From assembly GCF_006345805.1 (NCBI RefSeq), contig NC_043001.1, forward strand, positions 28,706,001-28,770,000: a stretch of DNA of 64,000 bases. The letters are read 5' to 3'. The translations under genes were made by a program, and so were the position numbers. Under the pieces are notes generated by a model. That model was not told where the DNA came from, searched no databases, and was given only the letters and a program-made list of their open reading frames with translations. Below are positions 1 to 63,827 of this stretch, in pieces (position 1 is the first letter of the stretch; each line of letters starts with the position of its first letter). Source of the DNA: Octopus sinensis (Eukaryota).

Positions 1-62
1 CTAGGCCAACCAGGTCTCGCTGCTGCTACTGCTGCTTCTGCTGCTGCTCGTAAGCTAACTAC
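1..62 (+). CDS. Candidate coding exon A (5'-truncated by window) of an unidentified gene; LGQPGLAAATAASAAA(RKLT)
   Basis: Open frame 1 with Ala-rich codons. Two donors: GTAAGC at 50 (phase 1) and GTCAGT at 63 (phase 2). Both phases match downstream exons. Confidence 0.6.
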
Positions 63-314
63 GTCAGTGACTTTTAATATAAGAAAGACACCATAATCAG
101 TTTATATTTAACACTCCCCAACTAAATACCAGTTGACTAATTATTGGTCACCAGTCAATTGCCTTTCGTTCCTTCATTTCTCACAGGATAGGAAATTTCA
201 TATAGAACAAAATGAAATGAACTGTAAATGAAAGCAAAAAGCAAAAAAAAAAACGCACACACTGTGTCACATATAAACCTACAAGGACAAATACACATGT
301 ACACAAACACACAC

Positions 315-346
<32 letters not shown>

Positions 347-359
347 CAAATTTCGTCAG

Positions 360-413
360 GGAAGCTGTGGCACTGCATATGACCTTTGCAGGTCTTCGCA
401 CACAGGCACAGTG
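360..413 (+). CDS. Candidate 54-nt symmetric (phase 2-2) cassette exon B; (T)EAVALHMTFAGLRTQAQ(W)
   Basis: Poly-T tract 319-346 and TCAG acceptor ending at 359. GTAAGA donor at 414. Open in the frame set by the donor at 63. Length is a multiple of 3. Confidence 0.6.
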
Positions 414-660
414 GTAAGACTGCTGCAACAGATGCGCCCAGCTTAAAGAAGGAAAATATAGGCAGAGGGGGAAGTTGGGAATCTGATCTGACTGCATGAC
501 AGGGGGAATCTCTGAAAAGCACCCCAAGGACCAGATGAATGTTTTTAAACCGGATGGTGGTAGGTTAGGCCTACTCCTTCATCACACTTAAGGGCAAACG
601 CACATACAATTCATAAAGCAATGGGGACATTCAAATTTACATCAATTTTTGATTTTGCAG

Positions 661-680
661 GAGGCAAAGAATGAATATTT
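661..680 (+). CDS. Candidate 20-nt micro-exon C (phase 2-1); (W)RQRMNI
   Basis: TTTTTGATTTTGCAG acceptor ending at 660. GTAAGA donor at 681. Restores the phase-1 exit of the short exon A form (13+54+20=87 nt; 13+20=33 nt). Confidence 0.55.
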
Positions 681-734
681 GTAAGACACAGAAAGAGAGA
701 GAGTGAGATGGAGATCGAGAGAGTGAGAGCATGT

Positions 735-756
735 TAGTGTGTGTGTGTGTGTGTGT

Positions 757-807
<51 letters not shown>
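735..807 (+). repeat. (GT)n microsatellite
   Basis: Direct reading. Confidence 0.95.
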
Positions 808-813
<6 letters not shown>

Positions 814-899
814 TTGCATGCGTGAGTAAGTGCAGGTAAATAAATATATGAGAGTCAAGAATGAATGAGCAAGTGAGAAAGGCAGAAGTGTGTGAATGT

Positions 900-1305
900 G
901 AGAGAGAAAGAGAGAAGAGAGAGACAAAGAGAGGGAGAGGGAGAGAGACAAGGAGAGGGGGGAGAAAGAGACAAGGAGAGAGAGAGACAAGAGAGGAGAC
1001 AGAGAGAGACGAGAGAGAGAGAGAGAGACAAGGGAAGAGGGAGAGAAAGAGACAAGGAGAGAGAGAGAGAGAGAGAGAGACAAGGAGAGAGAGAGAGAGA
1101 GACAGGAGAGAGAGAGAGACAAGGAGAGAGAGAGACAAGGAGAGAGAGAGAGACAGTGAGAGGGAGAGAGAGACAGTGAGAGGGAGAGAGAGGTACTTTG
1201 AGAAGGAAAGAGACAAGGAGAAGGAGAGAGACAAGAGAAGAGACAGAGAGAGACAAGAGACAGAACGAGAGAGAGAGAGAGAGACAAGGGAAGAGGGAGG
1301 TGGGA
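900..1305 (+). repeat. GA-rich compound microsatellite (GAGA/GACAAG units)
   Basis: Direct reading. Source of the spurious SLSLSL and ERERER ORFs. Confidence 0.95.
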
Positions 1306-2710: not shown

Positions 2711-3215
2711 ATAGACTCAGTTATCCGCATTTATTTTCCATGCTGAAATGCAAAATTAATGTAAAATCTCATGCCTGTGATACACCACCATTATGGAGGA
2801 ATCTATTCATCTTGCAAGACCATGAGTTACAATTACTGCTTCAGTTTTGTTGGTGATACAGCATCTCCTGTGACTGGAGACTCACATGTGATTGACAATC
2901 ATGGCTACAGTAACTGCTTTTAAGACAATCTACTAGTCTTGTTCTAGTACAGTATTTTTTCTTTTTTTCTTTTGTTGCTTTATTTCCATCAGCAAGTTTT
3001 AGTCTCTTCTCTTGTCTTTTTAAATTCCTACCTACTTGTAGCATCTAGTGCAACCAATCACCAGCAACGTTCTTCTACCATTCAATGGTTGTGTAAAAAG
3101 AATTTGAATCTCTTTTGCACACATGCTTAAAATAACGCTAGTGTCACACTTCTGTGTTCTTACTGGAGAGCAGCATGTGTCATATTGAGAGACAGCTATA
3201 TATCATCATCTTTCA

Positions 3216-3565
3216 TCATCATCATCGTTTAACGTCCGTTTTCCGTGCTAGCACAGGTTGGACGGTTCAACTGGGGTCTGGGAAGCCAGGAGGCTGCACC
3301 AGGCTCCAGTCTGATCTAGCAGTGTTTCTACAGCTGGATGCCCTTCCTAACGCCAACCACTTCATGAGTGTAGTGGGTGCTTTTTACGTGCCACTGGCAC
3401 AGGTGCCGGGGGGGTTAAGGGGGCCGACAGCGGCAACGATCAGTAGGTGCTTTTTACGTGCCACCGGCACAGAAGCCAGTCAAGGCGGCGCTGGCATTGG
3501 CCACGTTCGGATGGTGCTTTTTATGTGCCACCAGCACAGGTATCACAACTACAATTTCCATTTGA
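3216..3565 (-). mobile_element. RTE-LINE 3'UTR-derived element (three hairpin modules)
   Basis: Reverse complement of the GTTGGCGTTAGGAAGGGCATCCAGCTGTAGAAA...(GAT)n tail seen on the LINE ending near 47908. Confidence 0.85.
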
Positions 3566-4387
3566 TAATGCCTGTTTTTTTTCATGCTGGCCTAGAATGG
3601 ACAGTTTTATCTGAGGCAGCAAGCATACATGATACTTCTCATATATCTGATGATCTTATTGATTACATTCAAAACTGCTAATAAATTAAGACTGAAAATC
3701 TAGTAAAAAAAAAAAAATTTACTCATTGCTTTTATTGTTGACAAACATATTTTGCATTCTTTGTCATGCACAAATAAACACTACGATGGAAATATTTAAA
3801 TTTGCAATAAAAAAAATATACATTCATATGTCACCATGGGAAAACAAATGTAATGATAGCAAAAAGAAATATTAAAATATAAAACAGAAAAATAAATACA
3901 TCTGTACTCTCACAGATCTCCAGTCTACTCCACTAATGTTTACATCTGGTTTTAGTGACATTAAATAAATGAAAGATAAATACTCCCTCTTCCCTTGAAT
4001 TTTTTTTTTTTTATTTTCCATTGCTTAGTCACAGGAAAAAAGTTTACCCTTGACCTTTGCAGAGTTTTAGAAACTGGTGGAAAGGGAATGAGTGGAAAAA
4101 ATTATAACTCATCACATTGTCTGTCTAGCCAGAAGATTCCCACAGTCTCCTTTTATCCAGCGTTATTTACAAGGCTTTGAGTCAACATAACAAATATGGT
4201 AAATGACACTTGTTCTGAAGTACCCCTAGGACTACTGGATTATAAAACACATAACCAGTAACTTTTTCTTTTCTGAGGGGTTGTAATCCAACATATTAGT
4301 GGAACATTGTTGCTATTGTTTACAACCAAAGGTTACAAGCAGAATACATTTGTCAACAACAAAAACACACAATTTTACTCTGCTGGA

Positions 4388-4640
4388 TCATCATCATCAT
4401 CATCATTTAGCGTCCGCTTTCCATGCTAGCATGGGTTGGACGGTTCAACTGGGGTCTGGGAAGCCAGAAGGCTGCACCAGGCCCAGTCTGATCTGACAAT
4501 GTTTCTACAGCTGGATGCCCTTCCTAACGCCAACCACTCAGTGAGTGTAGTGGGTGCTTGTTACGTGCCAGACGGGGCTGGCAATGGCCACTATCGGATG
4601 GTGCTTTTTACGTGCTACCGGCAGGGGGGCCCGTTGGGCC
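4388..4640 (-). mobile_element. RTE-LINE 3'UTR-derived element
   Basis: Same tail family as 3216. Confidence 0.85.
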
Positions 4641-5218
4641 TAATTTATTAGTAAATATGAATGCAAGCAATAAGATTATTAAATATATGAAAGGTTTTAT
4701 GTATGCATAAGAAGCAGATCTATTCATTTAGATACATAAAATATTAACTCATGCTAATGAAAGGGCCTCTACATTGTTACTAGAGATGGCTACAAGTCCA
4801 TGCGGCAAACCTGCCCAACCATGGAAAAACATGATGACAATGAAATGAAGATTACAAGAAAGAGAACCCAATTATATCCAAAGACCTAGTCTTCGGTAAC
4901 AATTTTTAGGAACAGAGGCATTGACATTCTCCATGAGTGATAACTGTTATTAGTTTTACAAAACATGGAGACGAAATAGAAAGATGGACTCAGAGGAATT
5001 TGAATTCAGAATATAGAAGGACAATGAGGATTGATATTTAAATGGTGGAGAGAAATAAGGTTAGATGAAGTGGGGGGAAAGAAGAGAAAAAACCTGGAGC
5101 AGCCGTAAATTACTTCTTCAATTTGAAAATTTCAGAATAAGAAAAAAATGGAAAATAAGGATAACTCAGCAAAGTTTATTGGAAAACATCAGCAAACAAA
5201 TAAAGTTTCATTTTTTAA

Positions 5219-7718: not shown

Positions 7719-8035
7719 TTTCAATCCCACTGTGTAATACCTTGGGCAAGTGTCTTTTACTATAGCGCCAGGCCAACCAAAACCTTGTGAATAGATTTGA
7801 TAGACAGAAACTGAAAGAAACCCATCCTCTGTGTGCGTGTGTGTGTGTCCGCCACCACCATGTGACAACCAGTGTCAGTTTGTTTATGTCCCTGTAACTT
7901 AGCATTTTGGCAAAAAGAGACCAATAGAATACTAGGCTTAAAAAATATATAAGTATAGGGGTCAATTTGGCTAAGTCATTGAAAGCAGTCTCCCGGTGTA
8001 GCTGCAGTCTAAAGACTGAAACAAGTGGGGAAAAA
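7706..8035 (+). mobile_element. CORE-type tRNA SINE family A, decayed
   Basis: CCTTGGGCAAGTGTCTT core plus family A body and tail. Confidence 0.75.
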
Positions 8036-8651: not shown

Positions 8652-9045
8652 TTACTCTTTACTCTTTTACTTGTTTCAGTCATTTGACTGCGGCCATGCT
8701 GGAGCACTGCCTTTAGTCAAGCAAATCGACCCCGGGACTTATTCTTTGTAAGCCCAGTACTTATTCTATCGGTCTCTTTTGCCAAATCGCGAAATGACGG
8801 GGATGTAAACACACCAGCATCGGTTGTCAAGCAATGCTAGGGGGACAAACACACACACATACATATATATATGCATATATACAACAGGCTTCTTTCAGTT
8901 TCCGTCTACCAAATCCACTCACAAGGCATTGGTCAGCCCGAGGCTATAGCAGAAGACACTTGCCCAAGATGCCACGCAGTGGGACTGAACCCGGAACCAT
9001 GTAGTTGGTTAGCAAGCTACTTACCACACAGCCACTCCTGCGCCT
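8652..9045 (-). mobile_element. CORE-type tRNA SINE family A, full length, young subfamily
   Basis: Reverse complement of the 18172 and 26265 copies. A-box TGGCTGTGTGG, B-box-like GGTTCAGTCCC, internal (TA)n(TG)n, (GTAAAAGA)n tail. Resembles octopus OR-type CORE-SINEs. Confidence 0.9.
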
Positions 9046-9970: not shown

Positions 9971-10346
9971 TACTCTCTTTTACTCTTACTTGTTTCAGTC
10001 ATTTGACTGAGGCCATGCTGGAGCATCGACACCAGGACTTATTCTTTGTAAGCCTAGTACTTATTCTGAGACTCTTTTGCCAAACCACTTAGTTATGGGG
10101 ACGTAAACACACCAGTGTTAGTTTGTCAAGCGATGTTGTGGGGGGACAAACACAGACACACAAACATGCACACACTCATATATATACATATATACAATGG
10201 GCTTCTTTCAGTTTCCGTCTACCAAATCCACTCACAAGGCTTTGGTCAGCCCGAGGCTATAGTAGAAGTTACTTCCCCAAAGTGCCATGCAGTGGGACTG
10301 AACTTGAAACCATATGGTTGGTAAGCAAGCTACTTACCACACAGCC
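9971..10346 (-). mobile_element. SINE family A
   Basis: Homology to family A. Confidence 0.85.
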
Positions 10347-10769
10347 AAAAGATTTCAAACAAAGGATACTAAAGGAATAATAATAAAGCTAAAGTGAAGA
10401 ATGAGTATATAGTGCATGTGGTTAATTGAAAAGAAGGAAGGAAGGAAGAAAGGGGAGGGGGGGAGGAAGGAAGGAAGAAAGGGGAGGAAGGAAGGAAGTG
10501 ACCCACCCCCAAAATAATATCTGTTTCAATACACGATTTCACATCAGAAATATTGCAAAACAAATATAAACTTAATGATTTCATACATTTGTACCTTTAC
10601 GTAGGAATTAATTCATTACTTACTTTGGGAATTATGTGGAAGTTTGTTTTGCCAAATGAGACCAGAATAATACTGAAACATGTCCAGAATTACCTCCCTC
10701 ATCAATAAAAACATTAGCAACTGGTTAATATCCTTTTTCCTCATAACACTTCGATGCTCCAGGCATTTA

Positions 10770-15606: not shown

Positions 15607-15792
15607 ATGATATCTTATGAGTCCATGAAAAACTTTTGCTCAGAAGTATTTTTGCAAGAAACAAATAGGTTTCTTTCTCTAACATTTTATGTAGTTGAGC
15701 TTACACCAGTTAATGTGTGAAAAACAAAACATGAAGTTTGAAAGAACTTTCTATTAAACTAGTTTTTAAGCATTAATTAGAAATGGAGTTCT

Positions 15793-15954
15793 AGGCATAG
15801 GAGTGGCTGTGTGGTAAGTAGCTTGCTTACCAACCACATGGTTCCAGGTTCAGTCCCACTGTGTGGCACTTTGGGCAAGTGCCTTCTACTATAGCCAAAT
15901 GCCGACCAAAGCCTTGTGAGTGGATTTGGTAGACGGAAACTGAAAGAAGCCTGT

Positions 15955-16002
<48 letters not shown>

Positions 16003-16222
16003 TGTGTGTGTGTGTGTGTCTGTGTCTCCCCCTCCAACTTCACTTGACAACCGATGCTGGTGTGTTCACGTCCCCGTAGCTTAGCAGTTCAGCAAAAGAG
16101 ACCAATAGAATAAGTAGTAGGCTTACAAAGAATAAATCCTGGGGTCGATTTGCTCGATTAAAGGTGGTGCTCCAGCATGGCCACAGTCAAATGGTTAAAA
16201 CAAGTAAAAGAGTAAAGAGTAA
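15793..16222 (+). mobile_element. SINE family A
   Basis: Full head-to-tail homology. Confidence 0.9.
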
Positions 16223-16799
16223 AAAGGGGTCTATAGGTAAAAAAAAAATGAGAATCACTGCAGTAGAGTTTGAACTGAAAGAGTTTTAGCTGCTATTTCT
16301 AATAAGTCAGGTGACCATGTAGAGACTTGTAAACATGTAATGGATTAATGTTTAAACATTAGCAACAGATGTTTCGCTTGGTCCCTGGGAAAGACAACTA
16401 CCAGCTCTTTCTAGGTATGATAGTCTATCTATAGGAAGATATTGAACTACTTAATGCCACAGAATCTGTATGTAACACTTAGAACTATTTATTTATTGCC
16501 AGCATTATACAGTAAGGGATGTGTAATATAAATTACTTCTATCTCTACAAGCAGAGTGACAGCTGGTATGAGCTCAAATTTCATTCATACAGTGAAGCAA
16601 ATGAGAAATCCCTCTGTGATTGGCTGTAGATGCCAGACCAGCAGAAACATTTCCAAGTTATTTGGTATTTATTCTGCCCTATAGGCTACATTGGAAAAGT
16701 GAACATTACAATGATGATGCTGATGATGAAAATACTAGAGTAGATTGTCAACTAAATCCCCCTCTAGCAAAAATTTGGCTTTGTGCTTAATCAAAGAGT

Positions 16800-17155
16800 G
16801 GAGGTGCATGGCTTAGTGGTTAGGGTGTCAGTATCATGATCATAAGATTGTGGTTTCGATTCCTGGACCGGGCGACATGTTTGGCTTTGTGCATAATCAA
16901 AGAGTTGAGGCGCGTGGCTTAGTGGTTAGAGTGTCAGTATCATGATCGTAAGATTGTGGTTTCGATTCCTGGACCGGGCGATGATTTGTGTTATTCAGCA
17001 AAACACTTCATTTCACGTTGCTCCAGTCCACTCAGCTGGCAAAAATGAGTAACGCTGTGATGGACTGGCGTCCCGTCCAGCTGGGGAACACATACGCCAT
17101 AGAAACCGGGAAGCCAGGCCCATGAGCCTGACTAGGCTTTAAAAGGGTGCATTTA
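16800..17155 (+). mobile_element. tRNA-headed SINE with CORE-like and V-like segments, duplicated head
   Basis: A-box TGGCTTAGTGG, B-box-like GGTTTCGATTCC, CORE-like CCAGTCCACTCAGCTGG, V-like GATGGACTGGCGTCCCGTCCAG. 106-bp tandem duplication at the 5' end. Confidence 0.8.
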
Positions 17156-19285: not shown

Positions 19286-19812
19286 AAACTCTACTTGTGA
19301 AGACGTGTTGAGGCAAGTGAGGATCAGAATCGAAATCGATCAATGGAAATTGCGGATGTGCTACCAGTGCCGGTGGCATGTCGAAACTCTGCTTGTGAAG
19401 ACCCATTGAGGCAAGTGAGGATCAGAATCGAAATCGATCAATGGAAATTGCAGATGTGTTACCAGTGCCGGTGGCATGTAAGAGAACTTTCCGTTTCGCG
19501 ACCGTTGCCAGCACCGCTCCGTTTCGTGTCCGTTGCCAGCCTCGCCTGGCCCTCGTGCCGGTGGCACATAAAAAGCACCATCCGTTCGTGGCCGTTTGCC
19601 AGCTCTGTCTGGCACCAGTGCGGGTGGCACGTAAAAAGCACCCACTACACTCACGGAGTGGTTGGCGTTAGGAAGGGCATCCAGCCGTAGAAACACTGCC
19701 AGATTTGACTGGGCCTGATGAAGCCTTCTGGCTTCACAGACCCCAGTAGAACCGTCCAACCCATGCTAGCATGGAAAACGGACGCTAAATGATGATGATG
19801 ATGATGATGATA
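19286..19812 (+). mobile_element. RTE 3'UTR-derived element with 98-bp 5' tandem duplication
   Basis: Copies at 19286-19381 and 19384-19479, then hairpin modules, tail and (GAT)n. Confidence 0.85.
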
Positions 19813-22662: not shown

Positions 22663-22877
22663 TCCATATGTAATACATATTACTGGTAAAAAACATGTTG
22701 GTGAATTCTGGCTCATTGGCATAAAGAATTTCCAATTTCGCCTCTATAATTCTCTTTCCATGTGGGACAGGTTATGCAGTATATTACGTTCTGCATCTTG
22801 CAATTCATGTCTGCATAACTTTGAATGTGTGCCCACTCTTAAATTTTATTTGTTTGTTTCCCCCTGTATATTTGTAG

Positions 22878-22936
22878 ATGGGGTTACTGCAGATCCCACA
22901 TCTACCATCTCCACACTCTTGACCAGCTGTATAGAT
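22878..22936 (+). CDS. Candidate 59-nt exon E (phase 1-0); xGVTADPTSTISTLLTSCID
   Basis: Long pyrimidine tract with TTTGTAG acceptor ending at 22877. GTAAGC donor at 22937. The phase-1 frame is open and matches the exits of short exon A and of exon C. Confidence 0.6.
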
Positions 22937-23273
22937 GTAAGCACATTTTTTTTCTTCTTTCTTTCTTTCCTTCTCTTTTCCATTGACACTCCTTTCAGAT
23001 ACACAGGCACACACACACACAAAAACACACACTCTCACTTTCTCCCCATTCCTCACCTTCTTTTACTATCCTATATCTCTCTCCACACCTACACACTCAA
23101 TAATACTATAAAAAGAGACGAATCCCCTCAAAAAATTCAAATCTGAAGAATCTACTAGAGTAGATGCAAGCGCTAATATATGATTTATAAAAACATGTGA
23201 CATATTAATAAAAATCTGTAAATGTACACCCATCCAGATTTCTGAGTACCTTATTTTTTCTAATCTCTCTCTT

Positions 23274-34408: not shown

Positions 34409-35221
34409 CAGTAATCCCTCGACTATAGCAGGTGTTACATTCCAAAACCTCAGGCGATAGGTGAAAATCTGTGGAGTAGAAACACTACTGTACTGCATAT
34501 ATTTTATTATTATTATTTTTATAATTTGTATCTCTTTTACTCTCTTTTACTTGTTTCAGTCATTTGACAGTGTCCATGCTGGAGCACCGCCTTTAGTCGA
34601 GCAAATCGACCCCAGGACTTATTCTTTGTAAGCCTAGTGCTTATTCTATCAGTCTCTTTTGCTGAACCGCTAAGTTACGGAGATGCAAACACACCAGCAT
34701 CGGTTGTCAAGCAATGTTGGGAGGACAAACACAGACACACAAACACATATATATATATATACATATATACGATGGGCTTCTTTCAGTTTCCATCTACTAA
34801 ATCCACTCACAAGGCATTGGTCAGCCCAAGGCTATCGTAGAAGACACTTGCCCAAGGTGCCACGCAGTGGGACTGAACCCGGAACCATGAGGTTGGTAAG
34901 CAAGCTACTTACTACAGTATTGTGCGATTCTTTGTTTACTCATGTACAGTACACAATGTATTTGCTTTTAATATATTTTAATTAATGTGTTAAACAGTGC
35001 AGTATTGTACTGTATTTTTATTTATTAATTTTTAGGTGTGAAAATGCTTATTTTACCACAGAAATAATTAAAATCTAAACAAATATAAATACCTATCGTC
35101 CACAGAAACCCACGATATACTGAGGAGTCTGCGATATAAATTTACATATATTATTAGCCAGAAAAATCTACAATGTAATGAGGACATAATAGGTGAACCT
35201 CGATATGGTGAGTGGTTACTG
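34409..35221. mobile_element. Tigger/pogo-like MITE with nested SINE
   Basis: TA|CAGTAATCCCTCG...CGATATGGTGAGTGGTTACTG|TA. Confidence 0.75.
34529..34917 (-). mobile_element. SINE family A nested in MITE
   Basis: Homology to family A. Confidence 0.9.
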
Positions 35222-35468: not shown

Positions 35469-35586
<118 letters not shown>

Positions 35587-36230
35587 CTTGATTCCTTCCA
35601 TATGAGATGTCTGCATTATATTTGCAATGTTAAATGGCAAGATCATGTTCGAAATAGTGAGTTACTGGAGAGGTGTGAGATCACTGGTATTGAAACATTT
35701 TTGATTAAAATACAAATGCGGTGGTCTGGTCATCTCGTAAGTTCCAAAGCAACTTTCTTATGGGCAATTGACAAATTCTTCCCGTCCAACAGGGCGTCCT
35801 CTTCTTTGTTACAAGGACAAACTAAAAGACAATCTGAAGTGTTGTGATGTTGCTCTGAGCTCCTGGGAGAGTGCAGCAGGGGATCGCAGCAAGTGGAGGA
35901 AAATGTGTTTTCTAAAGACTAGAGAATTTGAAAGTAACCATCTTCATCATAGGGACGCCCTTCGTGCAAATTTGAAAGCAATGCATCAGCAAAATCCACC
36001 AAACAATGACTGTGTGTGTGTCACTGTGGGTTTAAAGTACGAAGCAAAGCTGGGTTATCTGTCCACTCGAGAAGACATTTTGAACCAACGAATACATGCA
36101 GGTGTACCATTTGCGAGAAAGTGTGCAAGACATCTGCTGGATTGAAGGTACACATGCGTGTCACAAGGCTTAGGAATTGTTGAAGGTTATTTACTGAACC
36201 CTCATTCATCGTCTTCGATGAGAGAATCCA
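35587..36230 (+). mobile_element. 5'-truncated RTE/BovB-like LINE (ORF2 C-terminus with C2H2 fingers)
   Basis: LDSFHMRCLHYICNVKWQDH...MRWSGHLV...GRPLLCYKDKLKDNLK...WESAAGDRSKWR, then C-x2-C...H-x3-H fingers. Frameshifted and flanked by (TA)n. Confidence 0.85.
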
Positions 36231-36232
36231 CC

Positions 36233-36269
<37 letters not shown>

Positions 36270-37204
36270 TGCATGCATGCACCCATGCAAACACACCCCA
36301 GTTTCTTCTCACAAGGTTTTGATTGGCTCGAGGCTAAAATAGAAGACACTTGGCCAAGGTGCCACATAGTGGGACTGAACCCAGAACCATATGGTTGAGA
36401 GGCAAATTTCTTGCCACACAGCCATACCTGCACCAACTGTCACCTCATTCAGTGCTTATCTTGGGGCTAAACAGAAACAAAAACAAAACAGGTCTTACAT
36501 AACTTGTTCCACTCCAAATAGTGAAATCTTCACAAAGAGCACACTTGAAACAAATATTAACATTAATTCATTCTAACCTCATTCACTGTCACATTTATTC
36601 ATAATTTTCCTATTTCATTTATTAATATATTTTTTTTCTTTACCAGTAATCAAAAGAAAGACATGAATAAAGAAAAGAAAATATGTTGGTAAAATTTCTA
36701 TAAATGTCAACTTTTAATTAGTTCTAAATCAGTAGTATTTAAAATGTAATTTGCTAGTATTTGTAATTACCACCTAAAAACTAAAAGATTACGTTTTCTG
36801 GGTGAGTGTGAGTATTGTAGTTTAAGTAAACAGAAAATTCTCAAAAATATTTAAATAGTATTTAAAAGTGAAGTTTGAGCTTAATATAGATTCTATTACT
36901 TATGACAAAATACGCTTAAAAGAGAGCACAAGAAAGCCACAATATCCTTATTCATTCCCTCTAAAATTAGTTCTTTATGACCATGAGATTTTTTTTTGTT
37001 TTATTGTTGTTTTTTTTTTTTTTGTAAAGTGAAAGTGTAGATTGACCCAGAAGATTGTACTGAACAAACTTCTGGGTCAATACTACAAGTTCAAATTTTG
37101 CTATGGGTAACTTTGCTTCCGCCCACTTAATATCATTTAATGTCCGTTTTCCATATATATATATATACACATGCATACATACATACACACACACATATAC
37201 ATAT

Positions 37205-38546: not shown

Positions 38547-38944
38547 TTTACTTACTCGTTTCAGTCATTTGACTGCGGCCATGCTGGAGCACCGCCTTTA
38601 GTCGAGCAAATTGACCCCAGGACTTAATCTTTGGAAGCCTAGTACTCATTCTATTGGACTCTTTTGCCGAACCGCTAAGTTACAGGGACGCAAACACACC
38701 ACCATCGGTTGTCAAGCGATATTGTGGGGACAAACACACACACACATATATTTATATATATATATATATATACATATATACGACGGGCTTCTTTCAGTTT
38801 CCGTCAACAAAATCCACTCACAAGGCTTTGGTCAGCCCAAGGCTATAGTAGAAGACACCTGTCCAAGGTGCCATGCAGTGGGAATGAACCCGGAACCATG
38901 TGGTTCATAAGCAAGCTACTTACCACACAGCCACTCCTGCACCT
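38547..38944 (-). mobile_element. SINE family A
   Basis: Full length. Confidence 0.9.
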
Positions 38945-38974
38945 ACATATCCAAACATATCTTATTTTTTCTCA

Positions 38975-39330
38975 ATTAGAACAACAACAGAAACCATACT
39001 CTTATATGGCTGCACAACATGGACTCTAAGAGGAAAGGAAACTAAATGGAACATACACAAGACTTCTGAGAGCAGCACTTAACGTCAAATGGCAGTCCCA
39101 TATAACAAACAAGGATTTTTTTATGGAAAATCTTCCAAGAGTTACCTCCAACATAAAGGAAAGAAGACCAAGATTCTGGGGACATTGCTTTCCCAGCAAG
39201 GATGAGGTGTTGAATCAAATGCTGATGTGGGAAACAAAGCACAGAAAGCAGTCTAGGGATCTTCTGAAGGGCAACCTACCAAGAGCAATGCAGGAGAAGA
39301 AATTCTGGAGGCAAGGGTTTGATAGTATTT
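38975..39330 (+). mobile_element. Decayed RTE-group LINE 3' fragment (third lineage)
   Basis: TETILLYGCTTWTL...NGTYTRLLRAALNVKWQSHITNK...NLPRVTSNIKERRPRFWGHCF. Confidence 0.75.
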
Positions 39331-40227
39331 GTCTGTATACAACACAATGATGATGGAAACAAATAGAAAAAAAAGAAAAAAAAAGGAGGTATAAATTTAA
39401 ATATGAGCATGAAAAAATGAGTTACAAAGAGTTAAAATAAAATTTTCAGAATAAATGTTGCCAGCACTAAAGAGTAAGAAGATTCTGAGATAGATAAGAG
39501 ACATAGCGGATGTTGTAAATATCTCTGGTATATCAACGTTGAATTACCAACAAGGATCATTTACTTCCTAAATCAACTGATAATTACATAAGTGAAATTA
39601 CTTAATAATTACAACTCTGCAACAATTAAGGGCATTACACACTGTGTGTGTGTGTGTGTGTACACAGGTGTGTGCAAGAGTGATAGACAGTTGTGGTGTA
39701 TCTGTATTGTAATGTGCATGTTGTTTAGTTCCAAGTTAACTCTGGTCTAGCAGACATGTGATGAAAGGCATTCTTATAACTATTCAGTCTTTTTGGGTTT
39801 ATCTAAAACCTATTATCCAATGTGTATGTATTTCTTTTTAAGACTGCGAGGTGATATTTGAAGGGAATTTGGCTGTTATTTCTAGCAGGTCAAGTGACCG
39901 TACAGAGAATAGTTCTTAACCTGGCTAGCTGTGTCCTTTTAGAAATATTGCCACAAGGACAATATTGTTATTGTCTTCGTTGTCCAAAAGTGGTGAGCTG
40001 GGCAGAAATGTTAGCATGCTGACTGTTTTAGTTCATTCTTTCTTTCTCAGAATGGACTAAGCAGAACTTGAGGAGACATGGAATGGAGGGTCCCTGAAGA
40101 GGTCACAGGACGTGTGATGAAATGTTTAAAGAGTTTGTGGTTTTATTTAGAAAAATGTTTAAACCAGTTACAATATTTATATTAATGAACAACTCGTAAG
40201 AATTTTAAATTGACAAAGCTCTTTTAA

Positions 40228-45562: not shown

Positions 45563-45959
45563 TGCGAGAAAATGTTTAAGTAATAGTTATTATAGAGAAG
45601 ATATGAAAAGCAGAGTGAAGTGGAGGAATGAAAACAGACATGAAATATGGAAGGATATCATATCTGTAGTTCCATTATTTAACTATAGTCTGTACATAGC
45701 ACTTACTCAACATTACCTGAGACCTTTAAGCCTTTTTGACACCAATACCTCTCATATCCTACATATATATATAGGGTGTGTGTGTGTGTGTGTGTGTGTG
45801 TGAAGCAAGACATGTATATGCCCCACTCACTCCTGGTTTCAAACACTCCTCCCCGACTTAGTCGAGGTGGCTTTTCATATCTTGCAAGCTACTTGGTGAC
45901 TGCACCGAGAGAAAAAAAAGAAAAGAAAAACACAGCCAGTACATACTGCAAAGTGGTTG

Positions 45960-47908
45960 ATATTAAAAGAGAAAGCAGTTAAGGATATGAAGATAGGGAA
46001 AGTCTCTGGCCCACCAGGAATCACCACTGAAATGCTTAAAATATCTGGCGATGTGGGTTATGGTCTTGTCACCCCTATTGTAAATCAGGTGGTTCACGAA
46101 GGAGTCATACTCAATGACTGGTAGAGCAGCACCATAGTCAACTGCTACAAAGGTAAAGGTGATGCCTTAGATAGAAATTATTAGTGGTATCAGATTGTTG
46201 GATCAGGTGATGAAAGTTACTGAGAGGATCATAGCCCAACTAATTAGGCAGAGAGTCTAGATGAGATACAGTGTGGTTTTGTGCTAGGGAGAAGTACCAC
46301 TGATGCTATATTTCTGATGAGACAGATGCAGAAGAAATACATAAGCCAAGGATAAACCTCTGTACTTGGCCTTTGTTGACTTGGAGAAAGCCGTTTGACA
46401 GGGTTCCCCGATTTCTTATCTTGTGGTCAATGCAGAAACTAGGGAGGGGACGAGTGGTTGGTGAGAGCTCTACAAGTCATGTACATGGATGCTACCTGTA
46501 AGGTGAAGGTTGGCAATGAATACAGCAGAGAATTCAGAGTGGAAGAAGAGGTTCACCAAGGATCGGTCCTCAGCCACCCCCTTATGTTCATCGTAGTCCT
46601 TCAGGCAATAACAGAGGAATTTAAGACAGGCTGCCCCTGGGAGCTCCTCTATGCTGATGACCTTGCTCTAACAGCTGAATCGCTACCAGAACTAGAGAAG
46701 TTTCAGGTATGGAAACAAGGATTAGAGTAGGAAAGAAGACAAATCACAAATCCCTTCAGGTAGATGGCCCTGCCTAATCTGTAAATAAGTCATAGGAAGA
46801 AACAACATAAGATGCATCCAGTGTAGGCTTCGCACACATAAGAGGTGCAGCAATATCAGAGGAAGGTTAACAGTGAAAATAGATTTGTATGTGGAAGATG
46901 CACAGGTACAATAAACACAACTGCCATGGAGGTAAGCTAGAGGTAGTAGATAGCTACCATTATCTAGGTGACAAGTTAGCAGCAGAGGTGGATGCTCCAA
47001 GAGTGTAGCTGTGAGAATAAAATTAGGCTGGGCAAAGCTCAGAGAGCTCCTACTTCTGCTGACAACAAAGGGTCTCTTAGAGTGAAAGGTAGATTGTATG
47101 CTGCATGGCAGTGAAACATGGGCTGTGATAGCTGAGGACATGCATAGGCTTGAAAGAAATGAAGTCAGTATGCTTTACTGGATGTGCAATGTCGGTGTGC
47201 ATGTTCGACAGTGTAAGTATCTCAAGAGAAAAGTTGAGCATAAGAAGCATCAGATGTGGTGTGCAAGAGCGATTGCGCTGGTAAGGTCATAGACAAGGAC
47301 AGCTGTGTAAAGAAGTGCTAATCTCTAACTGTGGAGGGAGCCTGTGATAGAAGTAGACCCAGGAAGACGTGGGACAAGGTGATGAAGCATGATCTTTGAA
47401 CTCTGAACCTAACAGAAACAATGATTAGTGACCAAGACCTTTAGCGATATGCTGTGCTTGAGAAAACCCGTCAAGCCAAGTGAAATCATAGTCATGGCTG
47501 ACGCTGGTGTCATGTAACTGGCACCTATGCCGGTGGCACATACAAAGCATTTTTCAAGTGTTGGGCCTCAAAGAGGCAAAGTAGCTGAACTCCTTTCAAG
47601 TGTTGGGCCTCACAGAAACAATGACCAAAACCTTTGGCATTATTCATGCTTGAGAAGAAGACGCATCAAGCCAAATAAAATAGCAGTCATGGAAGATACC
47701 GGTATCATGCAAATGGCACCTGTGCCAGTGGCACGTAAAAGCAACCATTACACTCTCGGAGTGATTGGCATTAGGAAGGGCAACCAGCCATAGAAACCAT
47801 GCCAAACCAGACAGGAGTCTGGTGCAGCCTTCCAGCTTGCCAGCTCTGGTCAAACCGTCCAACCCATGCCAGCATGGACAACAGACATCAAATGATGGTG
47901 ATGATGAT
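45960..47908 (+). mobile_element. 5'-truncated, decayed RTE-clade LINE (RT domain to 3' tail)
   Basis: KGKGDALDRNY, GRSTTDAIF, LAFVDLEKA, GVHQGSVLS-like, ELLYADDL, YLG, LHGSETW and GRPRKTWD motifs. 3'UTR and (GAT)n tail. Many stops and frameshifts. Confidence 0.95.
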
Positions 47909-48244
47909 ATGCAGCCATAGAAACCATGCAAAAGCCTACACTGAAGCTCAATACAGCCCTGTAGCTCACTGGATCCTGTCAAACCATCCTAGCTATACCA
48001 ACATGGAAAACAGACATTAAATTATAATGCTGATGATGATTCCAACCATGCAACAAGCTCACACATAACCTACTATTTCCAGTTGCTATGAAACAGCTTG
48101 AAAATGAAGGAAGGGCCTTCACAAATAGAGACCTTGACAACATTGAAATCTGTTAAAGGTAGTACTAGTTTATTATTATGCAAACTAAGTGATAAAAGAG
48201 AAATTATTACTATTAACATGTATGAGTCATCATTAACATTCAAG

Positions 48245-58120: not shown

Positions 58121-58652
58121 TGCATTTGAACTAAATTTGGTTACAGGAAGACATGCATGTGTAAATACATGCATATGTGTGCATGAATGGAATTATCTGA
58201 AGTTGTCTCCCGTGTGTTAACATTTGAATGTATTTATGAGCATATGCAATTATAGGTGTACATTATGAGTGGCTGTGTGGTAAGTAGCTTGCTTACCAAC
58301 CACATGGTTCCGGGTTCAGTCCCACTGTGTGGCACCTTGGGCAAGTGTCTTCTACAATAGCCTTGGGCCGACCAAAGTTTTGTGAGTGCATTTGAACTAA
58401 ATTTGGTTACAGGAAGACATGCATGTGTAAATACATGCATATGTGTGCATGAATGGAATTATCTGAAGTTGTCTCCCGTGTGTTAACATTTGAATGTATT
58501 TATGAGCATATGCAATTATAGGTGTACATTATGAGTGGCTGTGTGGTAAGTAGCTTGCTTACCAACCACATGGTTCCGGGTTCAGTCCCACTGTGTGGCA
58601 CCTTGGGCAAGTGTCTTCTACAATAGCCTTGGGCCGACCAAAGTTTTGTGAG
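58121..58652 (+). repeat. Exact 266-bp tandem duplication (flank plus SINE A head)
   Basis: Copies at 58121-58386 and 58387-58652; no mismatch found by eye. Confidence 0.92.
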
Positions 58653-59100
58653 TGGATTTGGTAGACGGAAACTGAAAGAAGCCATCATGTACATATGTAT
58701 GTATGTATGTGTGGGTGCATGTGTGTGTGAGTGTGTGTATGTGTATGTGTGTGTATGTGTATGTGTGTGTGTCTGTGTGTGTGTCTGTGTGTGTGTGTGT
58801 GTGCGTGTGTGTGCGTGTGTATGTGTGTATGTACGTGTGTGTGCGTATGTATGTATGTATGTATGTATGTATGTATGTATGTATGTATATGTGTGTGTGT
58901 GTGTGTGTGTGTATGTTTACATGTCTGTGTTTGTCCCCCCAACATCATTTGATAACCGATACTTAGCAGTTTGGCAAAAGACCCCGATAGAATAAGTACT
59001 AGGTTTACATAGAATAAGTCCTGGGGTCAATTTGCTCGACTAAAGGTGGTGCTCCAGCATGGCCACAGTCAAATGACAAACTAGTAAAAGAATAAAAGAA
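58533..59100 (+). mobile_element. SINE family A with expanded internal microsatellite
   Basis: Head, core and tail homology. Confidence 0.88.
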
Positions 59101-59459
59101 TATATTTTCTTGTGCATGCATGTATAATAGTGTGGATGTCAGTGTATATGTGTAGATGGTAGAGTATGTAGGTATTATTGTATGTTCATATGTGTGTGTA
59201 TGTGTGTTTCTATAGCCAAATGCTGTAATTGGTGCCCTCACCTGCTACCAAGCAAGATAATAATCACCACCCAATCTATAAAACAATGAACAGCTTGAAC
59301 ACAGTTACACGAAGAATTGGAAACAAACAAAATTGTTTACATGAGCTTTTGTTTACAATCAGCAAACACACCTGAAGACAAGGAGAAATGCAAACTCACT
59401 TGAGAACACACATGCACACCCTACAAATTTCTCTCACAAAATATTGATCAATAGTGTTC

Positions 59460-59609
59460 AAGTGGCTGTGTGGTAAGTAGCTTGCTTACCAACCACATGG
59501 TTCCGGGTTCAGTCCCACTGTGTGGCACCTCGGGCAAATGTCTTCTACTATAGCCTCGGGCCGACCAAAGCCTTGTGAGTGGATTTGGTAGACGGAAACT
59601 GAAAGAGGC

Positions 59610-59676
<67 letters not shown>

Positions 59677-59905
59677 GTATGTGTGTGTATATGTTTGTGT
59701 GTCTATATTTGTCCCCCCAAACATTGCTTGACAACCGACGGTGGTGTGTTTATGTCCCCGTAACTTAGCGGTTCAGCAAAAAAGACCGATAGAATAAGTA
59801 CTAGGCTTACAAAGAATAAGTCCTGGGGTCGATTTGCTCGACTAAAGGCAATGCTCCAGCATGGCCGCAATCAAATGACTGAAACAAGTAAAAGAGTGAA
59901 AGAGA
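59460..59905 (+). mobile_element. SINE family A
   Basis: Full homology. Confidence 0.9.
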
Positions 59906-59984
59906 TATGTTTCCAAAGTTAACCTCTTCACCACTCAGCCATATTTGCACCCATAAAATTTTAGCCAGTGTATACATATATCAT

Positions 59985-60350
59985 CATTGTTTAACATCTG
60001 TTTTCCATGCAGGCATGAGTTGGACTGTTTGACAGGAACTGGCCAGTCGGGGAGCTGTCTAGACTGCAATTGTCTGTTTTGGCATGGCTTTCTATGGCTG
60101 GAAGCCCTTCCTAATCCCAACCATTTTACAGAATGCGCTGGGTGCTTTTTATGTGCCACCAGCATGGGACCTGCCACCAACATATATCATCATCATCACC
60201 ATTTGATGTACGTTTTCCATGCTAGCATGGGTTGGACGGTTTTGACTGAGGGCTGGCAACCAGATGGCAGCACCAGGCTCCAGTCTTGATCTGGTAGAGT
60301 TTCTATAGCTGGATGCCCTTCCTAACACCAACCACTCCGAGAGTGTAGTT
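59985..60350 (-). mobile_element. Two adjacent RTE 3'UTR-derived elements
   Basis: Tails at about 59985-60185 and 60187-60350. Confidence 0.8.
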
Positions 60351-63009: not shown

Positions 63010-63213
63010 TCTCTTTTACTTGTTTCAGTCATTTGACTGCGGCCATGCTGGAGCACCGCCTTTTTAGTCGAGCAAATCGACCCCAGGACTTATTCTTTGT
63101 AAGCCTAGTACTTATCCTATTGGTCTCTTTTGCCGAACCACTAAGTAACGGGGACGTAAACACACCAGCATCGGTTGTCAAGCGATGTTGGGGAGACAAA
63201 CACAGACACACAA

Positions 63214-63265
<52 letters not shown>

Positions 63266-63425
63266 GAAGGGCTTCTTTCGGTTTCCATCTACCAAATCCA
63301 CTCACAAGGCTTTGGTCGGTCCGAGGCTATAGTAGAAGACACTTGCCCAAGGTGCCACGCAGTGGGACTGAACCCGGAACTGTGTGGTTGGTAAGCAAGC
63401 TACTTACCACACAGCCACTCCTGCG

Positions 63426-63428
<3 letters not shown>
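63010..63428 (-). mobile_element. SINE family A
   Basis: Full length. Confidence 0.92.
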
Positions 63429-63460
<32 letters not shown>

Positions 63461-63487
63461 TTTATTTAAAAGCAGCAGAAATTCAAC

Positions 63488-63534
63488 AAAACCTGTTACT
63501 CGGAGTTTCACGTTCTCGTTTGTCGGATAGTTTT
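63488..63534 (-). ncRNA. Hammerhead-like motif (core CCGACAA) in about 80-bp element between (TA)n tracts
   Basis: Minus strand AAAACUAU-CCGACAA-ACG(AGAA)CGU-GAAA-CUCCGAG-UA-ACAGGUUUU. Confidence 0.45.
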
Positions 63535-63827
63535 GTTAAAATATATATATATATATATTATATATATATATCGTGACGTATATTTGCCACTTAAATGTGA
63601 CTAACCCTTAAAGGTAGATGACATTGTAGCTTCTAGCCCCAGGAGGACACCTCCTCCAGCCGGTTACTGACACACTATCTGTGACCTATCAATATTTGTA
63701 AAGGGAAGCCATCCTTCCCATCTCCAAACTGACACGATACACACGGACTCGAGTTTCTGGTTATTGACCTGTCATCAGCGTGTGACAATCACCGGTTGTC
63801 GATGTGAAGTGGCTCCCAATGCAAATA

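What the first reader, a model, noticed from the sequence alone, without database searches (positions are those of the whole stretch)
1..680. Phase-compensating cluster: two donors on one exon plus a 54-nt exon and a 20-nt micro-exon
Seen: exon A can exit at 49 (GTAAGC, phase 1) or 62 (GTCAGT, phase 2). The phase-2 exit reads in frame into exon B (360-413, phase 2-2) and/or micro-exon C (661-680, phase 2-1). The added lengths are 87 nt (with B) or 33 nt (without B), both multiples of 3, so all routes reach phase-1 exon E at 22878 in the same frame. Predicted products: ...AAAHGVTADPT..., ...AAARKLTTRQRMNIYGVTADPT... and ...AAARKLTTEAVALHMTFAGLRTQAQWRQRMNIYGVTADPT... Read-through of the B donor gives QAQW*. 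Inference: a regulated, probably neural, splicing switch in which the choice of 5' splice site is obligatorily coupled to micro-exon inclusion; the long exit adds an RKLT PKA-like site. The introns here (297 and 247 nt) are short and free of interspersed repeats, unlike the rest of the window. I could not identify the protein.
Basis: partly seen in the sequence, partly recalled or inferred. Interest (0 to 1): 0.7.

Follow-up and report, generated by a model that had tools for sequence, protein, structure and literature searches.

The report
Possible frame-compensating alternative exon cluster, unverified
At the left edge of this cephalopod-like window, a second splice donor 13 bases downstream, a 54-base exon and a 20-base micro-exon fit together to keep the reading frame, more neatly than chance usually gives, but no transcript, protein match or related genome could be found, so it is not shown to be a real splicing switch.

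Summary
The donors are 49|GTAAGC and 62|GTCAGT, exon B is 360-413 (54 nt) and exon C is 661-680 (20 nt). Exon E starts at 22878; I place its end at 22936. The three listed routes are open and in frame, and the five other combinations shift the frame or hit a stop.

The cluster looks exon-like. Each acceptor is the first AG after a pyrimidine tract. B is one of about five best acceptor/donor pairs on the + strand of the 64 kb. Positions 1-680 hold no interspersed repeat. An empirical null from the window reproduces the full pattern in 0.3-0.6% of pseudo-anchors.

Independent support is absent. No protein among 5.8 billion matches any isoform, any frame of the locus or any other exon-like ORF. 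The database does hold Octopus bimaculoides proteins. There was no Pfam, PDB or Rfam hit. The gene's upstream exons lie outside the window, so the gene stays unidentified.

"Neural", "regulated" and "PKA site" are untested. The Arg-Lys arises automatically from reading through the GTAAG donor.

Best guess, 0.38: a real frame-coupled alternative exon cluster in a disordered Ala/Ser/Thr-rich linker. Chance pseudo-exons remain a strong rival.

The parts
1..49 (+). Visible 3' end of putative coding exon A (frame 1: LGQPGLAAATAASAAA, then 1 base). It runs off the window's left edge.
   Evidence: Open frame and translation. GC 0.61 against 0.30 in the following intron. Amino-acid composition is in the top 0.5% of six-frame 18-aa windows, driven by Ala.
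19..48 (+). Imperfect (GCT)10 repeat that encodes the Ala-rich run.
   Evidence: TRF. It is the only GC-rich trinucleotide repeat among the rows listed for the window (90 rows were not shown).
50..55 (+). Proximal 5' splice site GTAAGC (exon exit at 49, phase 1).
   Evidence: Weight-matrix score 5.07.
50..62 (+). 13-nt extension used if the distal donor is chosen. It encodes (R)KLT(T).
   Evidence: Arg-Lys comes from reading through C|GTAAG.
63..68 (+). Distal 5' splice site GTCAGT (exit at 62, phase 2). It is weak: C at +3 and C at -1.
   Evidence: Score 2.23.
319..346 (+). T28 run that serves as the pyrimidine tract of B's acceptor. It can pair with the A-rich stretch 219-253.
   Evidence: TRF. 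Inverted repeats I1-I24.
360..413 (+). Putative cassette exon B, 54 nt, phase 2-2. It encodes (T)EAVALHMTFAGLRTQAQ(W). It is usable only after the distal donor and only together with C.
   Evidence: Acceptor 5.5 and donor 8.35, among about five best pairs on the + strand. GC 0.56.
493..498 (+). Single UGCAUG (Rbfox-type hexamer), 80 nt downstream of B.
   Evidence: About 0.43 expected per 720 nt, so it is not significant.
656..658 (+). UGC immediately upstream of C's AG (UGCAG).
   Evidence: This is the position class described for SRRM3/4-dependent micro-exons.
661..680 (+). Putative micro-exon C, 20 nt, phase 2-1. It encodes (W/T)RQRMNI(Y). 13+20 = 33 restores the frame.
   Evidence: Acceptor 4.3 and donor 2.96. 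There are 7 comparable 10-30-nt pseudo-exons on the + strand of the window.
681..686 (+). 5' splice site GTAAGA of C, followed at once by (GA)n/(GT)n microsatellites (690-1284).
22878..22936 (+). Putative next exon E, 59 nt, phase 1-0. It encodes (H/Y)GVTADPTSTISTLLTSCID. Donor GTAAGC at 22937.
   Evidence: Acceptor 3.5 and donor 6.86. It lies in a unique block. Its composition is unremarkable, and it is one of many phase-1-compatible candidates.

Best explanation
The left edge of the window is the 3' end of a coding exon of an unidentified cephalopod gene on the + strand. That exon ends in an Ala/Ser/Thr-rich, probably disordered, linker.

The default splice uses the strong proximal donor (49|GTAAGC) and joins a distant exon, probably E at 22878. 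A minority or regulated pathway uses the weak distal donor 13 nt downstream. That choice shifts the frame, so it gives a translatable mRNA only if the 20-nt micro-exon C is also included (13+20 = 33 nt, 11 codons). On that pathway the 54-nt exon B is an optional in-frame cassette (18 more codons).

The coupling is not enforced mechanically. It emerges because the five mismatched combinations are out of frame or carry a stop, and would be expected to be removed by nonsense-mediated decay.

Shown: the sequence, the phases, the open frames and the relative splice-site quality.
Inferred: that any of these sites is used, that the products are made, and everything about regulation.
For: - All phases and peptides were verified.
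- Each acceptor is the first AG after a pyrimidine tract.
- B has one of the best acceptor/donor pairs in the 64 kb.
- A, B and E are GC-richer than their flanks.
- Positions 1-680 are free of the interspersed repeats that cover 38% of the window.
- (GCT)10 is the only GC-rich triplet repeat among the rows TRF listed (90 rows were not shown). It reads as poly-Ala with a protein-like composition.
- The full pattern recurs at only 0.3-0.6% of pseudo-anchors in the same window, and at 0 of 712 at the observed scores.
- A UGC sits between the pyrimidine tract and the AG of micro-exon C, as in most SRRM3/4-dependent micro-exons.
- The frame arithmetic holds whatever the downstream exon is.
Against: - No protein among 5.8 billion matches any isoform, any of the six frames of the locus, or the 38 best splice-bounded ORFs of the window. 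Octopus bimaculoides proteins are in that collection.
- There was no Pfam or PDB match.
- No further host-gene exon with a domain was found downstream.
- The distal donor (2.23) and C's donor (2.96) are weak.
- The null thresholds were set after the fact.
- Two extra in-frame routes turned up by chance, which shows that such compensation is not rare.
- E is not distinguished from more than 10 other phase-compatible pseudo-exons.
- B's and E's compositions are only in the top 6% and top 27%.
- There is no conservation or transcript evidence of any kind.
Confidence: 0.38

Rival explanations
1. Exon A (and perhaps E) is a real constitutive exon spliced only from the proximal donor. B, C and the distal donor are chance pseudo-sites in the first 700 nt of a long intron, and the frame arithmetic is coincidence.
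For: - Pseudo-exons with sites as good as C's are common: 7 on the + strand alone.
- One-exon compensation occurs at 6% of pseudo-anchors.
- Two unlisted in-frame routes also exist.
- The distal donor is weak.
- No protein carries B or C.
- The neighbouring pseudo-exon 503-559 scores as protein-like as B. The GC-richer block around 347-580 therefore looks 'coding' in several frames.
Against: - The complete three-part pattern is rare in the null: 0.3-0.6%.
- B's site pair is among the best in the window.
Confidence: 0.22
2. Nothing here is coding. The (GCT)10 tract is a non-coding microsatellite (intron, UTR or intergenic) that happens to be followed by GTAAG, and the whole exon chain is a reading imposed on non-coding DNA.
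For: - Only 49 nt of 'exon A' are visible, and 30 of them are a triplet repeat.
- No protein match in any frame or on either strand, with a working positive control.
- No domain-bearing exon was found among the unique + strand ORFs downstream of E. The minus strand was not scanned against Pfam.
- The window is microsatellite- and repeat-rich throughout.
Against: - GC-rich triplet repeats are otherwise absent from the rows TRF listed for the window.
- The frame is open, with a consensus donor exactly at the repeat's end.
- Strong exon-like sites cluster in the next 700 nt.
Confidence: 0.27
3. B and C are real but unproductive ('poison') exons. When included after the dominant proximal donor they introduce stops (RGKE*, RKLWHCI*) and down-regulate the gene through nonsense-mediated decay. 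The in-frame combinations are incidental.
For: - A49-C-E and A49-B give premature stops.
- Poison exons and frame-shifting alternative 5' sites are standard forms of unproductive splicing, especially in RNA-binding-protein genes (PMC11062102).
- The Ala-rich linker weakly resembles those of CELF, MBNL and NOVA proteins (low complexity, not significant).
Against: - The gene is unidentified.
- This reading does not explain why 13+20 and 54 are all frame-neutral.
- No conservation data are available.
Confidence: 0.1

Closest known systems
Frame-policed pairs of alternative splicing events (e.g. non-3n mutually exclusive exon pairs such as FGFR2 IIIb/IIIc, where including both or neither exon shifts the frame and triggers nonsense-mediated decay; PMC11062102 Fig. 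2G; Jones et al. 2001, cited)
   Same: Each single event (13-nt donor shift, 20-nt exon) shifts the frame. Only particular combinations are translatable, so the apparent coupling can be produced by the reading frame plus mRNA surveillance.
   Different: Here the rule would be 'both or neither' (mutual inclusion) between a 5' splice-site shift and a micro-exon, not 'one or the other' between two similar exons. No transcript evidence exists.
SRRM3/4 (eMIC)-dependent neural micro-exons
   Same: Length 20 nt, a UGC between the pyrimidine tract and the AG, and a GTAAGA intron start.
   Different: Neural micro-exons are mostly multiples of three and frame-preserving on their own (my knowledge of Irimia et al. 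2014). C is 20 nt and needs a partner event. Tissue specificity and conservation are untested.
RBFOX1/2 C-terminal exon cluster (B40, M43, A53)
   Same: It is a cluster of short non-3n alternative exons in a low-complexity, Ala-containing C-terminal region of a splicing regulator (PMC2777236).
   Different: In RBFOX1 the A53 exon changes the C-terminal frame rather than being compensated. No RBFOX sequence is detectable in the window.
MBNL1 54-nt exon 5, which follows an Ala-rich stretch (my recollection, not tested against a database record)
   Same: A 54-nt alternative cassette lies directly after an AAATAA-type alanine run.
   Different: There is no sequence similarity between B and the MBNL exon, and no MBNL zinc-finger or downstream motifs in the window. 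The resemblance is probably coincidental.
Poison exons / unproductive splicing of RNA-binding-protein genes
   Same: B or C joined to the main donor gives premature stops. This matches the types listed in PMC11062102.
   Different: Three combinations remain fully open. Gene identity and conservation are unknown.

Membership tests
SRRM3/4 (eMIC)-dependent neural micro-exon | Very short exon (about 3-27 nt) | tested here: met
   C is 20 nt.
SRRM3/4 (eMIC)-dependent neural micro-exon | UGC motif between branch point/pyrimidine tract and the 3' AG | tested here: met
   UGC at 656-658, directly before AG 659-660. The feature is described in 10.1101/2024.09.17.613571. UGCAG acceptors are common, so this is weak support.
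SRRM3/4 (eMIC)-dependent neural micro-exon | Frame-preserving on its own (length a multiple of three) | tested here: not met
   20 nt. A49-C-E gives RGKE*.
SRRM3/4 (eMIC)-dependent neural micro-exon | Neuron-specific inclusion and deep conservation | not testable with these tools
   No cephalopod RNA-seq or orthologous genomes were reachable.
Frame-policed coupled alternative events | Each event alone disrupts the frame and the combination restores it | tested here: met
   13 nt + 20 nt = 33, with B adding 54. A62-E is frame-shifted, and A49-C, A49-B and A62-B-E reach stops.
Frame-policed coupled alternative events | The events are actually used and co-occur on the same transcripts | not testable with these tools
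   Needs junction or long reads.
Real internal coding exons of an annotated gene | The encoded peptide is found in a predicted or known protein of the species or a relative | tested here: not met
   No hit for the isoforms or for any frame of the locus. The positive control hit O. bimaculoides UniRef proteins.
Real internal coding exons of an annotated gene | Splice-site quality above the intronic background | tested here: met
   B is among about five best pairs on the + strand. The full pattern occurs in 0.3-0.6% of null anchors. The distal donor and C's donor are weak.
CELF / MBNL / RBFOX / NOVA / Musashi linker region (gene identity) | Family domains or linker motifs detectable in the window or the peptide | tested here: not met
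   tblastn of recalled human C-terminal regions against the window gave only noise. The best peptide match was the CELF2 linker, 48% over 25 low-complexity residues. Pfam found nothing.
Poison exon (unproductive splicing) | Inclusion relative to the main isoform introduces a premature stop | tested here: met
   A49-C-E and A49-B give stops.
Poison exon (unproductive splicing) | High intronic/exonic conservation and sensitivity to nonsense-mediated decay | not testable with these tools
   No orthologous sequence or expression data.

The most novel reading that the evidence does not exclude
This is a conserved coleoid 'mutual-inclusion' switch. A 13-nt shift of the 5' splice site and a non-3n 20-nt micro-exon with a UGC-type acceptor are productive only together. 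The reading frame and mRNA surveillance would then convert two independent, possibly neuron-regulated, choices into an all-or-none insertion of an 11- or 29-residue basic segment into a disordered linker. That would be a class of neural micro-exon that escapes the usual multiple-of-three rule by pairing with a donor shift.
Probability: 0.12. Interest if true: 0.5.

Novelty: new member of a known kind. Interest (0 to 1): 0.27.

Why it matters
If real, it would be a clean invertebrate example of two frame-shifting splicing choices that are viable only in combination. It would also be a micro-exon that is not a multiple of three. Both bear on how micro-exon programmes and reading-frame constraints co-evolve, and cephalopods are of special interest for neural transcript diversity. 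As it stands it is a well-formed prediction in an unidentified gene. Its value is as a precise, cheaply testable hypothesis (five junctions), not as a finding.

Tried and rejected
1. Protein identification.
- The longest isoform against 5.8 billion proteins gave nothing.
- A 2935-residue composite gave nothing among 8000 capped candidates. It held all six frames of 1-720 and 22740-22990 plus the 38 best splice-bounded ORFs on both strands.
- Pfam on the three isoforms gave only a sub-threshold HEAT_EF3_N hit (E 0.08). PDB gave nothing.

I did not work around this.

3. Reaching the sequence upstream of the window. Exact-ORF look-ups of two left-edge ORFs were not on record.

4. Gene-family guesses from memory (CELF2, RBFOX1, MBNL1, NOVA1, MSI1). 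tblastn against the window gave only noise, and peptide matches were low-complexity only. All were rejected as identifications.

5. Looking for further host-gene exons. Pfam on all unique + strand stop-free stretches downstream of E gave only a weak C2H2 finger next to a LINE fragment.

6. RNA-level explanations. There was no Rfam family and no tRNA. The fold of 1-720 is no more stable than shuffles (z = 0.15). There is no long-range pairing between the donor region and C. Recursive splice sites were rejected because no AG|GTAAG junction occurs at B or C.

7. Regulatory-motif enrichment in 1-720 (UGCAUG, UCUCU, UGUGU): none.

8. An antisense-SINE origin for B's T-run acceptor: no other copy of 347-650 exists in the window, so this stays undecided.

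Full report
**What is in the sequence**

The window is AT-rich (about 38% G+C) and full of microsatellites and interspersed repeats. Self-matches cover 38% of it, and TRF reports 240 tandem-repeat rows. A LINE tail at 35545-36142 finds its best database relatives in two Octopus bimaculoides UniRef proteins (49% and 52% identity).

At the left edge every statement of the finding reproduces:
- Frame 1 is open from base 1 (LGQPGLAAATAASAAA).
- There is a consensus donor C|GTAAGC after base 49 (phase 1) and a second, weaker donor AC|GTCAGT after base 62 (phase 2).
- 360-413 is a 54-nt AG..GT-bounded segment, open in the phase-2 frame.
- 661-680 is a 20-nt AG..GT-bounded segment.
- 22878 is a good acceptor of a 59-nt segment that ends at 22936 (GAT|GTAAGC).

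I also translated the other combinations. A49-B, A49-C-E and A62-B-E run into stops, and A62-E is frame-shifted. So three of the eight combinations of donor, B and C are translatable.

**Is it more than chance?**

I scored sites with a simple metazoan weight matrix. It is crude and not trained on cephalopods. The scores were:

| Site | Acceptor | Donor |
|---|---|---|
| A, proximal donor (49) | – | 5.07 |
| A, distal donor (62) | – | 2.23 |
| B | 5.5 | 8.35 |
| C | 4.3 | 2.96 |
| E | 3.5 | 6.86 |

Only about five acceptor/donor pairs on the + strand of the whole window reach acceptor at least 5 and donor at least 8, and B is one of them. C-like micro-exons are commoner, with seven on the + strand.

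Each of the three acceptors is the first AG after its pyrimidine tract. For B that tract is a T28 run.

As an empirical null I treated every strong GT in the window, on both strands and in all three phases, as a pseudo "exon A". I then asked how often a second donor within 40 nt plus pseudo-exons within 700 nt restore the frame with an open reading:
- At the observed scores: 21 of 712 anchors for one compensating exon, and 0 of 712 for a two-exon route.
- At thresholds just below the observed scores: 6% for one exon, 1% for two exons, and 0.3-0.6% for the full pattern with and without the cassette.

The cluster is therefore unusual, but three things temper this:
- The thresholds were chosen after the fact.
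- I found two more in-frame routes that nobody predicted: the distal donor to an acceptor at 22770, and the proximal donor to 503-559 to E.
- E itself is one of more than ten phase-1-compatible pseudo-exons, and its composition is ordinary.

The frame arithmetic (13+20 = 33, plus 54) does not depend on which downstream exon is the true one.

**Other local evidence**
- A, B and E are G+C-richer (0.61, 0.56, 0.47) than their flanks (0.30-0.44). C is not (0.30).
- Positions 1-680 contain no interspersed repeat, even at low stringency. But 66 unique blocks of at least 150 nt exist in the window, so this is not distinctive.
- The (GCT)10 tract that encodes the alanines is the only G+C-rich triplet repeat among the rows TRF listed for the window (90 rows were not shown).
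- A UGC lies directly before C's AG, and one UGCAUG lies 80 nt after B. Neither motif is enriched.
- The RNA fold of 1-720 is no better than shuffles. No pairing links the donors to C. The only notable pairing is an A-rich stretch (219-253) against B's T-run.

**Independent support: none found**
- The longest isoform finds no protein at E of 10 or below among 5.8 billion.
- A composite query finds nothing at E of 1 or below (candidates capped at 8000). It held all six frames of the locus and of the E region, plus the 38 best splice-bounded ORFs of both strands.
- The same database returns O. bimaculoides proteins for the LINE control. The negative is therefore meaningful, though modest. The 2015 octopus gene models are incomplete, and the window's species is unknown.
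- Pfam, PDB and Rfam give nothing.
- No domain-bearing exon lies downstream of E on the + strand.
- The part of the gene that could identify it lies upstream of base 1, and I could not reach it.
- Recalled linker regions of CELF2, MBNL1, NOVA1, RBFOX1 and MSI1 give only low-complexity similarity, the best being CELF2 at 48% over 25 residues. None of their domains is in the window. The protein stays unidentified.

**How it would work**

My best reading (0.38) is a real cluster:
- The proximal donor is the default.
- Use of the weak distal donor turns the proximal GTAAGC into codons (CGT AAG CTA = Arg-Lys-Leu) and shifts the frame.
- Only inclusion of the 20-nt exon restores the frame.
- The 54-nt exon is an optional cassette on that branch.

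The "obligatory coupling" would then not be a mechanical link. It would be the visible outcome after out-of-frame products are discarded. This is the same logic that polices non-3n mutually exclusive exon pairs (PMC11062102), applied here to a both-or-neither pair.

The Arg-Lys of the "RKLT PKA-like site" is dictated by the splice-site consensus read in phase 1, so it is not evidence of a selected kinase site (inference). "Neural" has no support beyond exon size and the UGC.

**Rivals**
- A (and perhaps E) is real, but B, C and the distal donor are pseudo-sites (0.22).
- Nothing here is coding, and the GCT tract is a microsatellite followed by a chance GTAAG (0.27).
- B and C are real poison exons acting through nonsense-mediated decay (0.10).

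The data cannot separate these. Five junction counts from RNA-seq would.

**Comparison and verdict**

The closest known kinds are:
- frame-policed pairs of alternative events;
- SRRM3/4-type micro-exons, where length and UGC are met and the multiple-of-three rule is not;
- the RBFOX cluster of short non-3n exons (PMC2777236);
- poison exons.

If real, this is a new member of a known kind with an uncommon "mutual inclusion" twist. It is not a new principle.

The interpretation cannot be judged with these tools. Interest is low to moderate.

Noticed in passing
The distal donor (62) joined to an acceptor at 22770 adds 120 nt in frame. The proximal donor (49) joined to a 57-nt phase 1-1 pseudo-exon at 503-559 (donor GTG|GTAGGT) also reaches E in frame.
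   Followed up: partly
window 219-253 and 319-354: An A-rich stretch (including A11) can pair with the T28 run that forms B's pyrimidine tract (74-100% complementary, 66-nt loop). It could mask the acceptor, or it could simply be low-complexity sequence.
   Followed up: no
window 35545-36142, 39030-39347 and about 45800-47700 (+): These are degraded LINE fragments. The 35.5-36.1 kb tail hits Octopus bimaculoides UniRef proteins A0A0L8HZP8 and A0A0L8FMP5 (49-52% identity). The 45.8-47.7 kb piece carries frame-shifted reverse-transcriptase-like motifs, but Pfam did not report RVT_1.
   Followed up: partly
window, e.g. 8798-9001, 10093-10377, 15780-16088(-), 34674-34982, 38679-39026, 58503-58916(-), 59451-59702(-), 63160-63573: This is an abundant short interspersed repeat. 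It is recognisable in translation by ...LPNPLTRLWSARGYSRRHLPKVPRSGTEPGTMWLVSKLLTTQP..., usually sits next to (GT)n/(TA)n tracts, and has many copies on both strands.
   Followed up: no
window 3142-3678, 4430-4648, 19364-19765(-), 47647-47988(-), 59957-60286: This is a second repeat family, with the translated signature ...LDALPNANHS.SVVGAFYVPPA... It is often preceded by an (ATC/ATG)n triplet run.
   Followed up: no
window 16774-16981: This is a tandem duplication of a 106-nt unit (94% identical). The unit contains tRNA-like A-box and B-box sequences (TGGCTTAGTGG ... GGTTTCGATTCC). ARAGORN and Rfam call no tRNA, so it is likely a tRNA-derived SINE head.
   Followed up: partly
window 19286-19479 and 19510-19642: These are two adjacent tandem duplications (98-nt unit x2 at 93% identity, 63-nt unit x2.1 at 81%) inside a repeat-rich stretch.
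   Followed up: no
window 690-1284: About 600 nt of (GA)n/(GT)n microsatellite follows micro-exon C's donor directly. So C's downstream intronic flank is low-complexity rather than the conserved unique sequence typical of regulated micro-exons.
   Followed up: no
window 36100-36280 (+): This is a weak C2H2 zinc-finger match (Pfam E 0.04, below the cut-off) in an ORF just after the LINE tail. It is probably transposon-derived.
   Followed up: no
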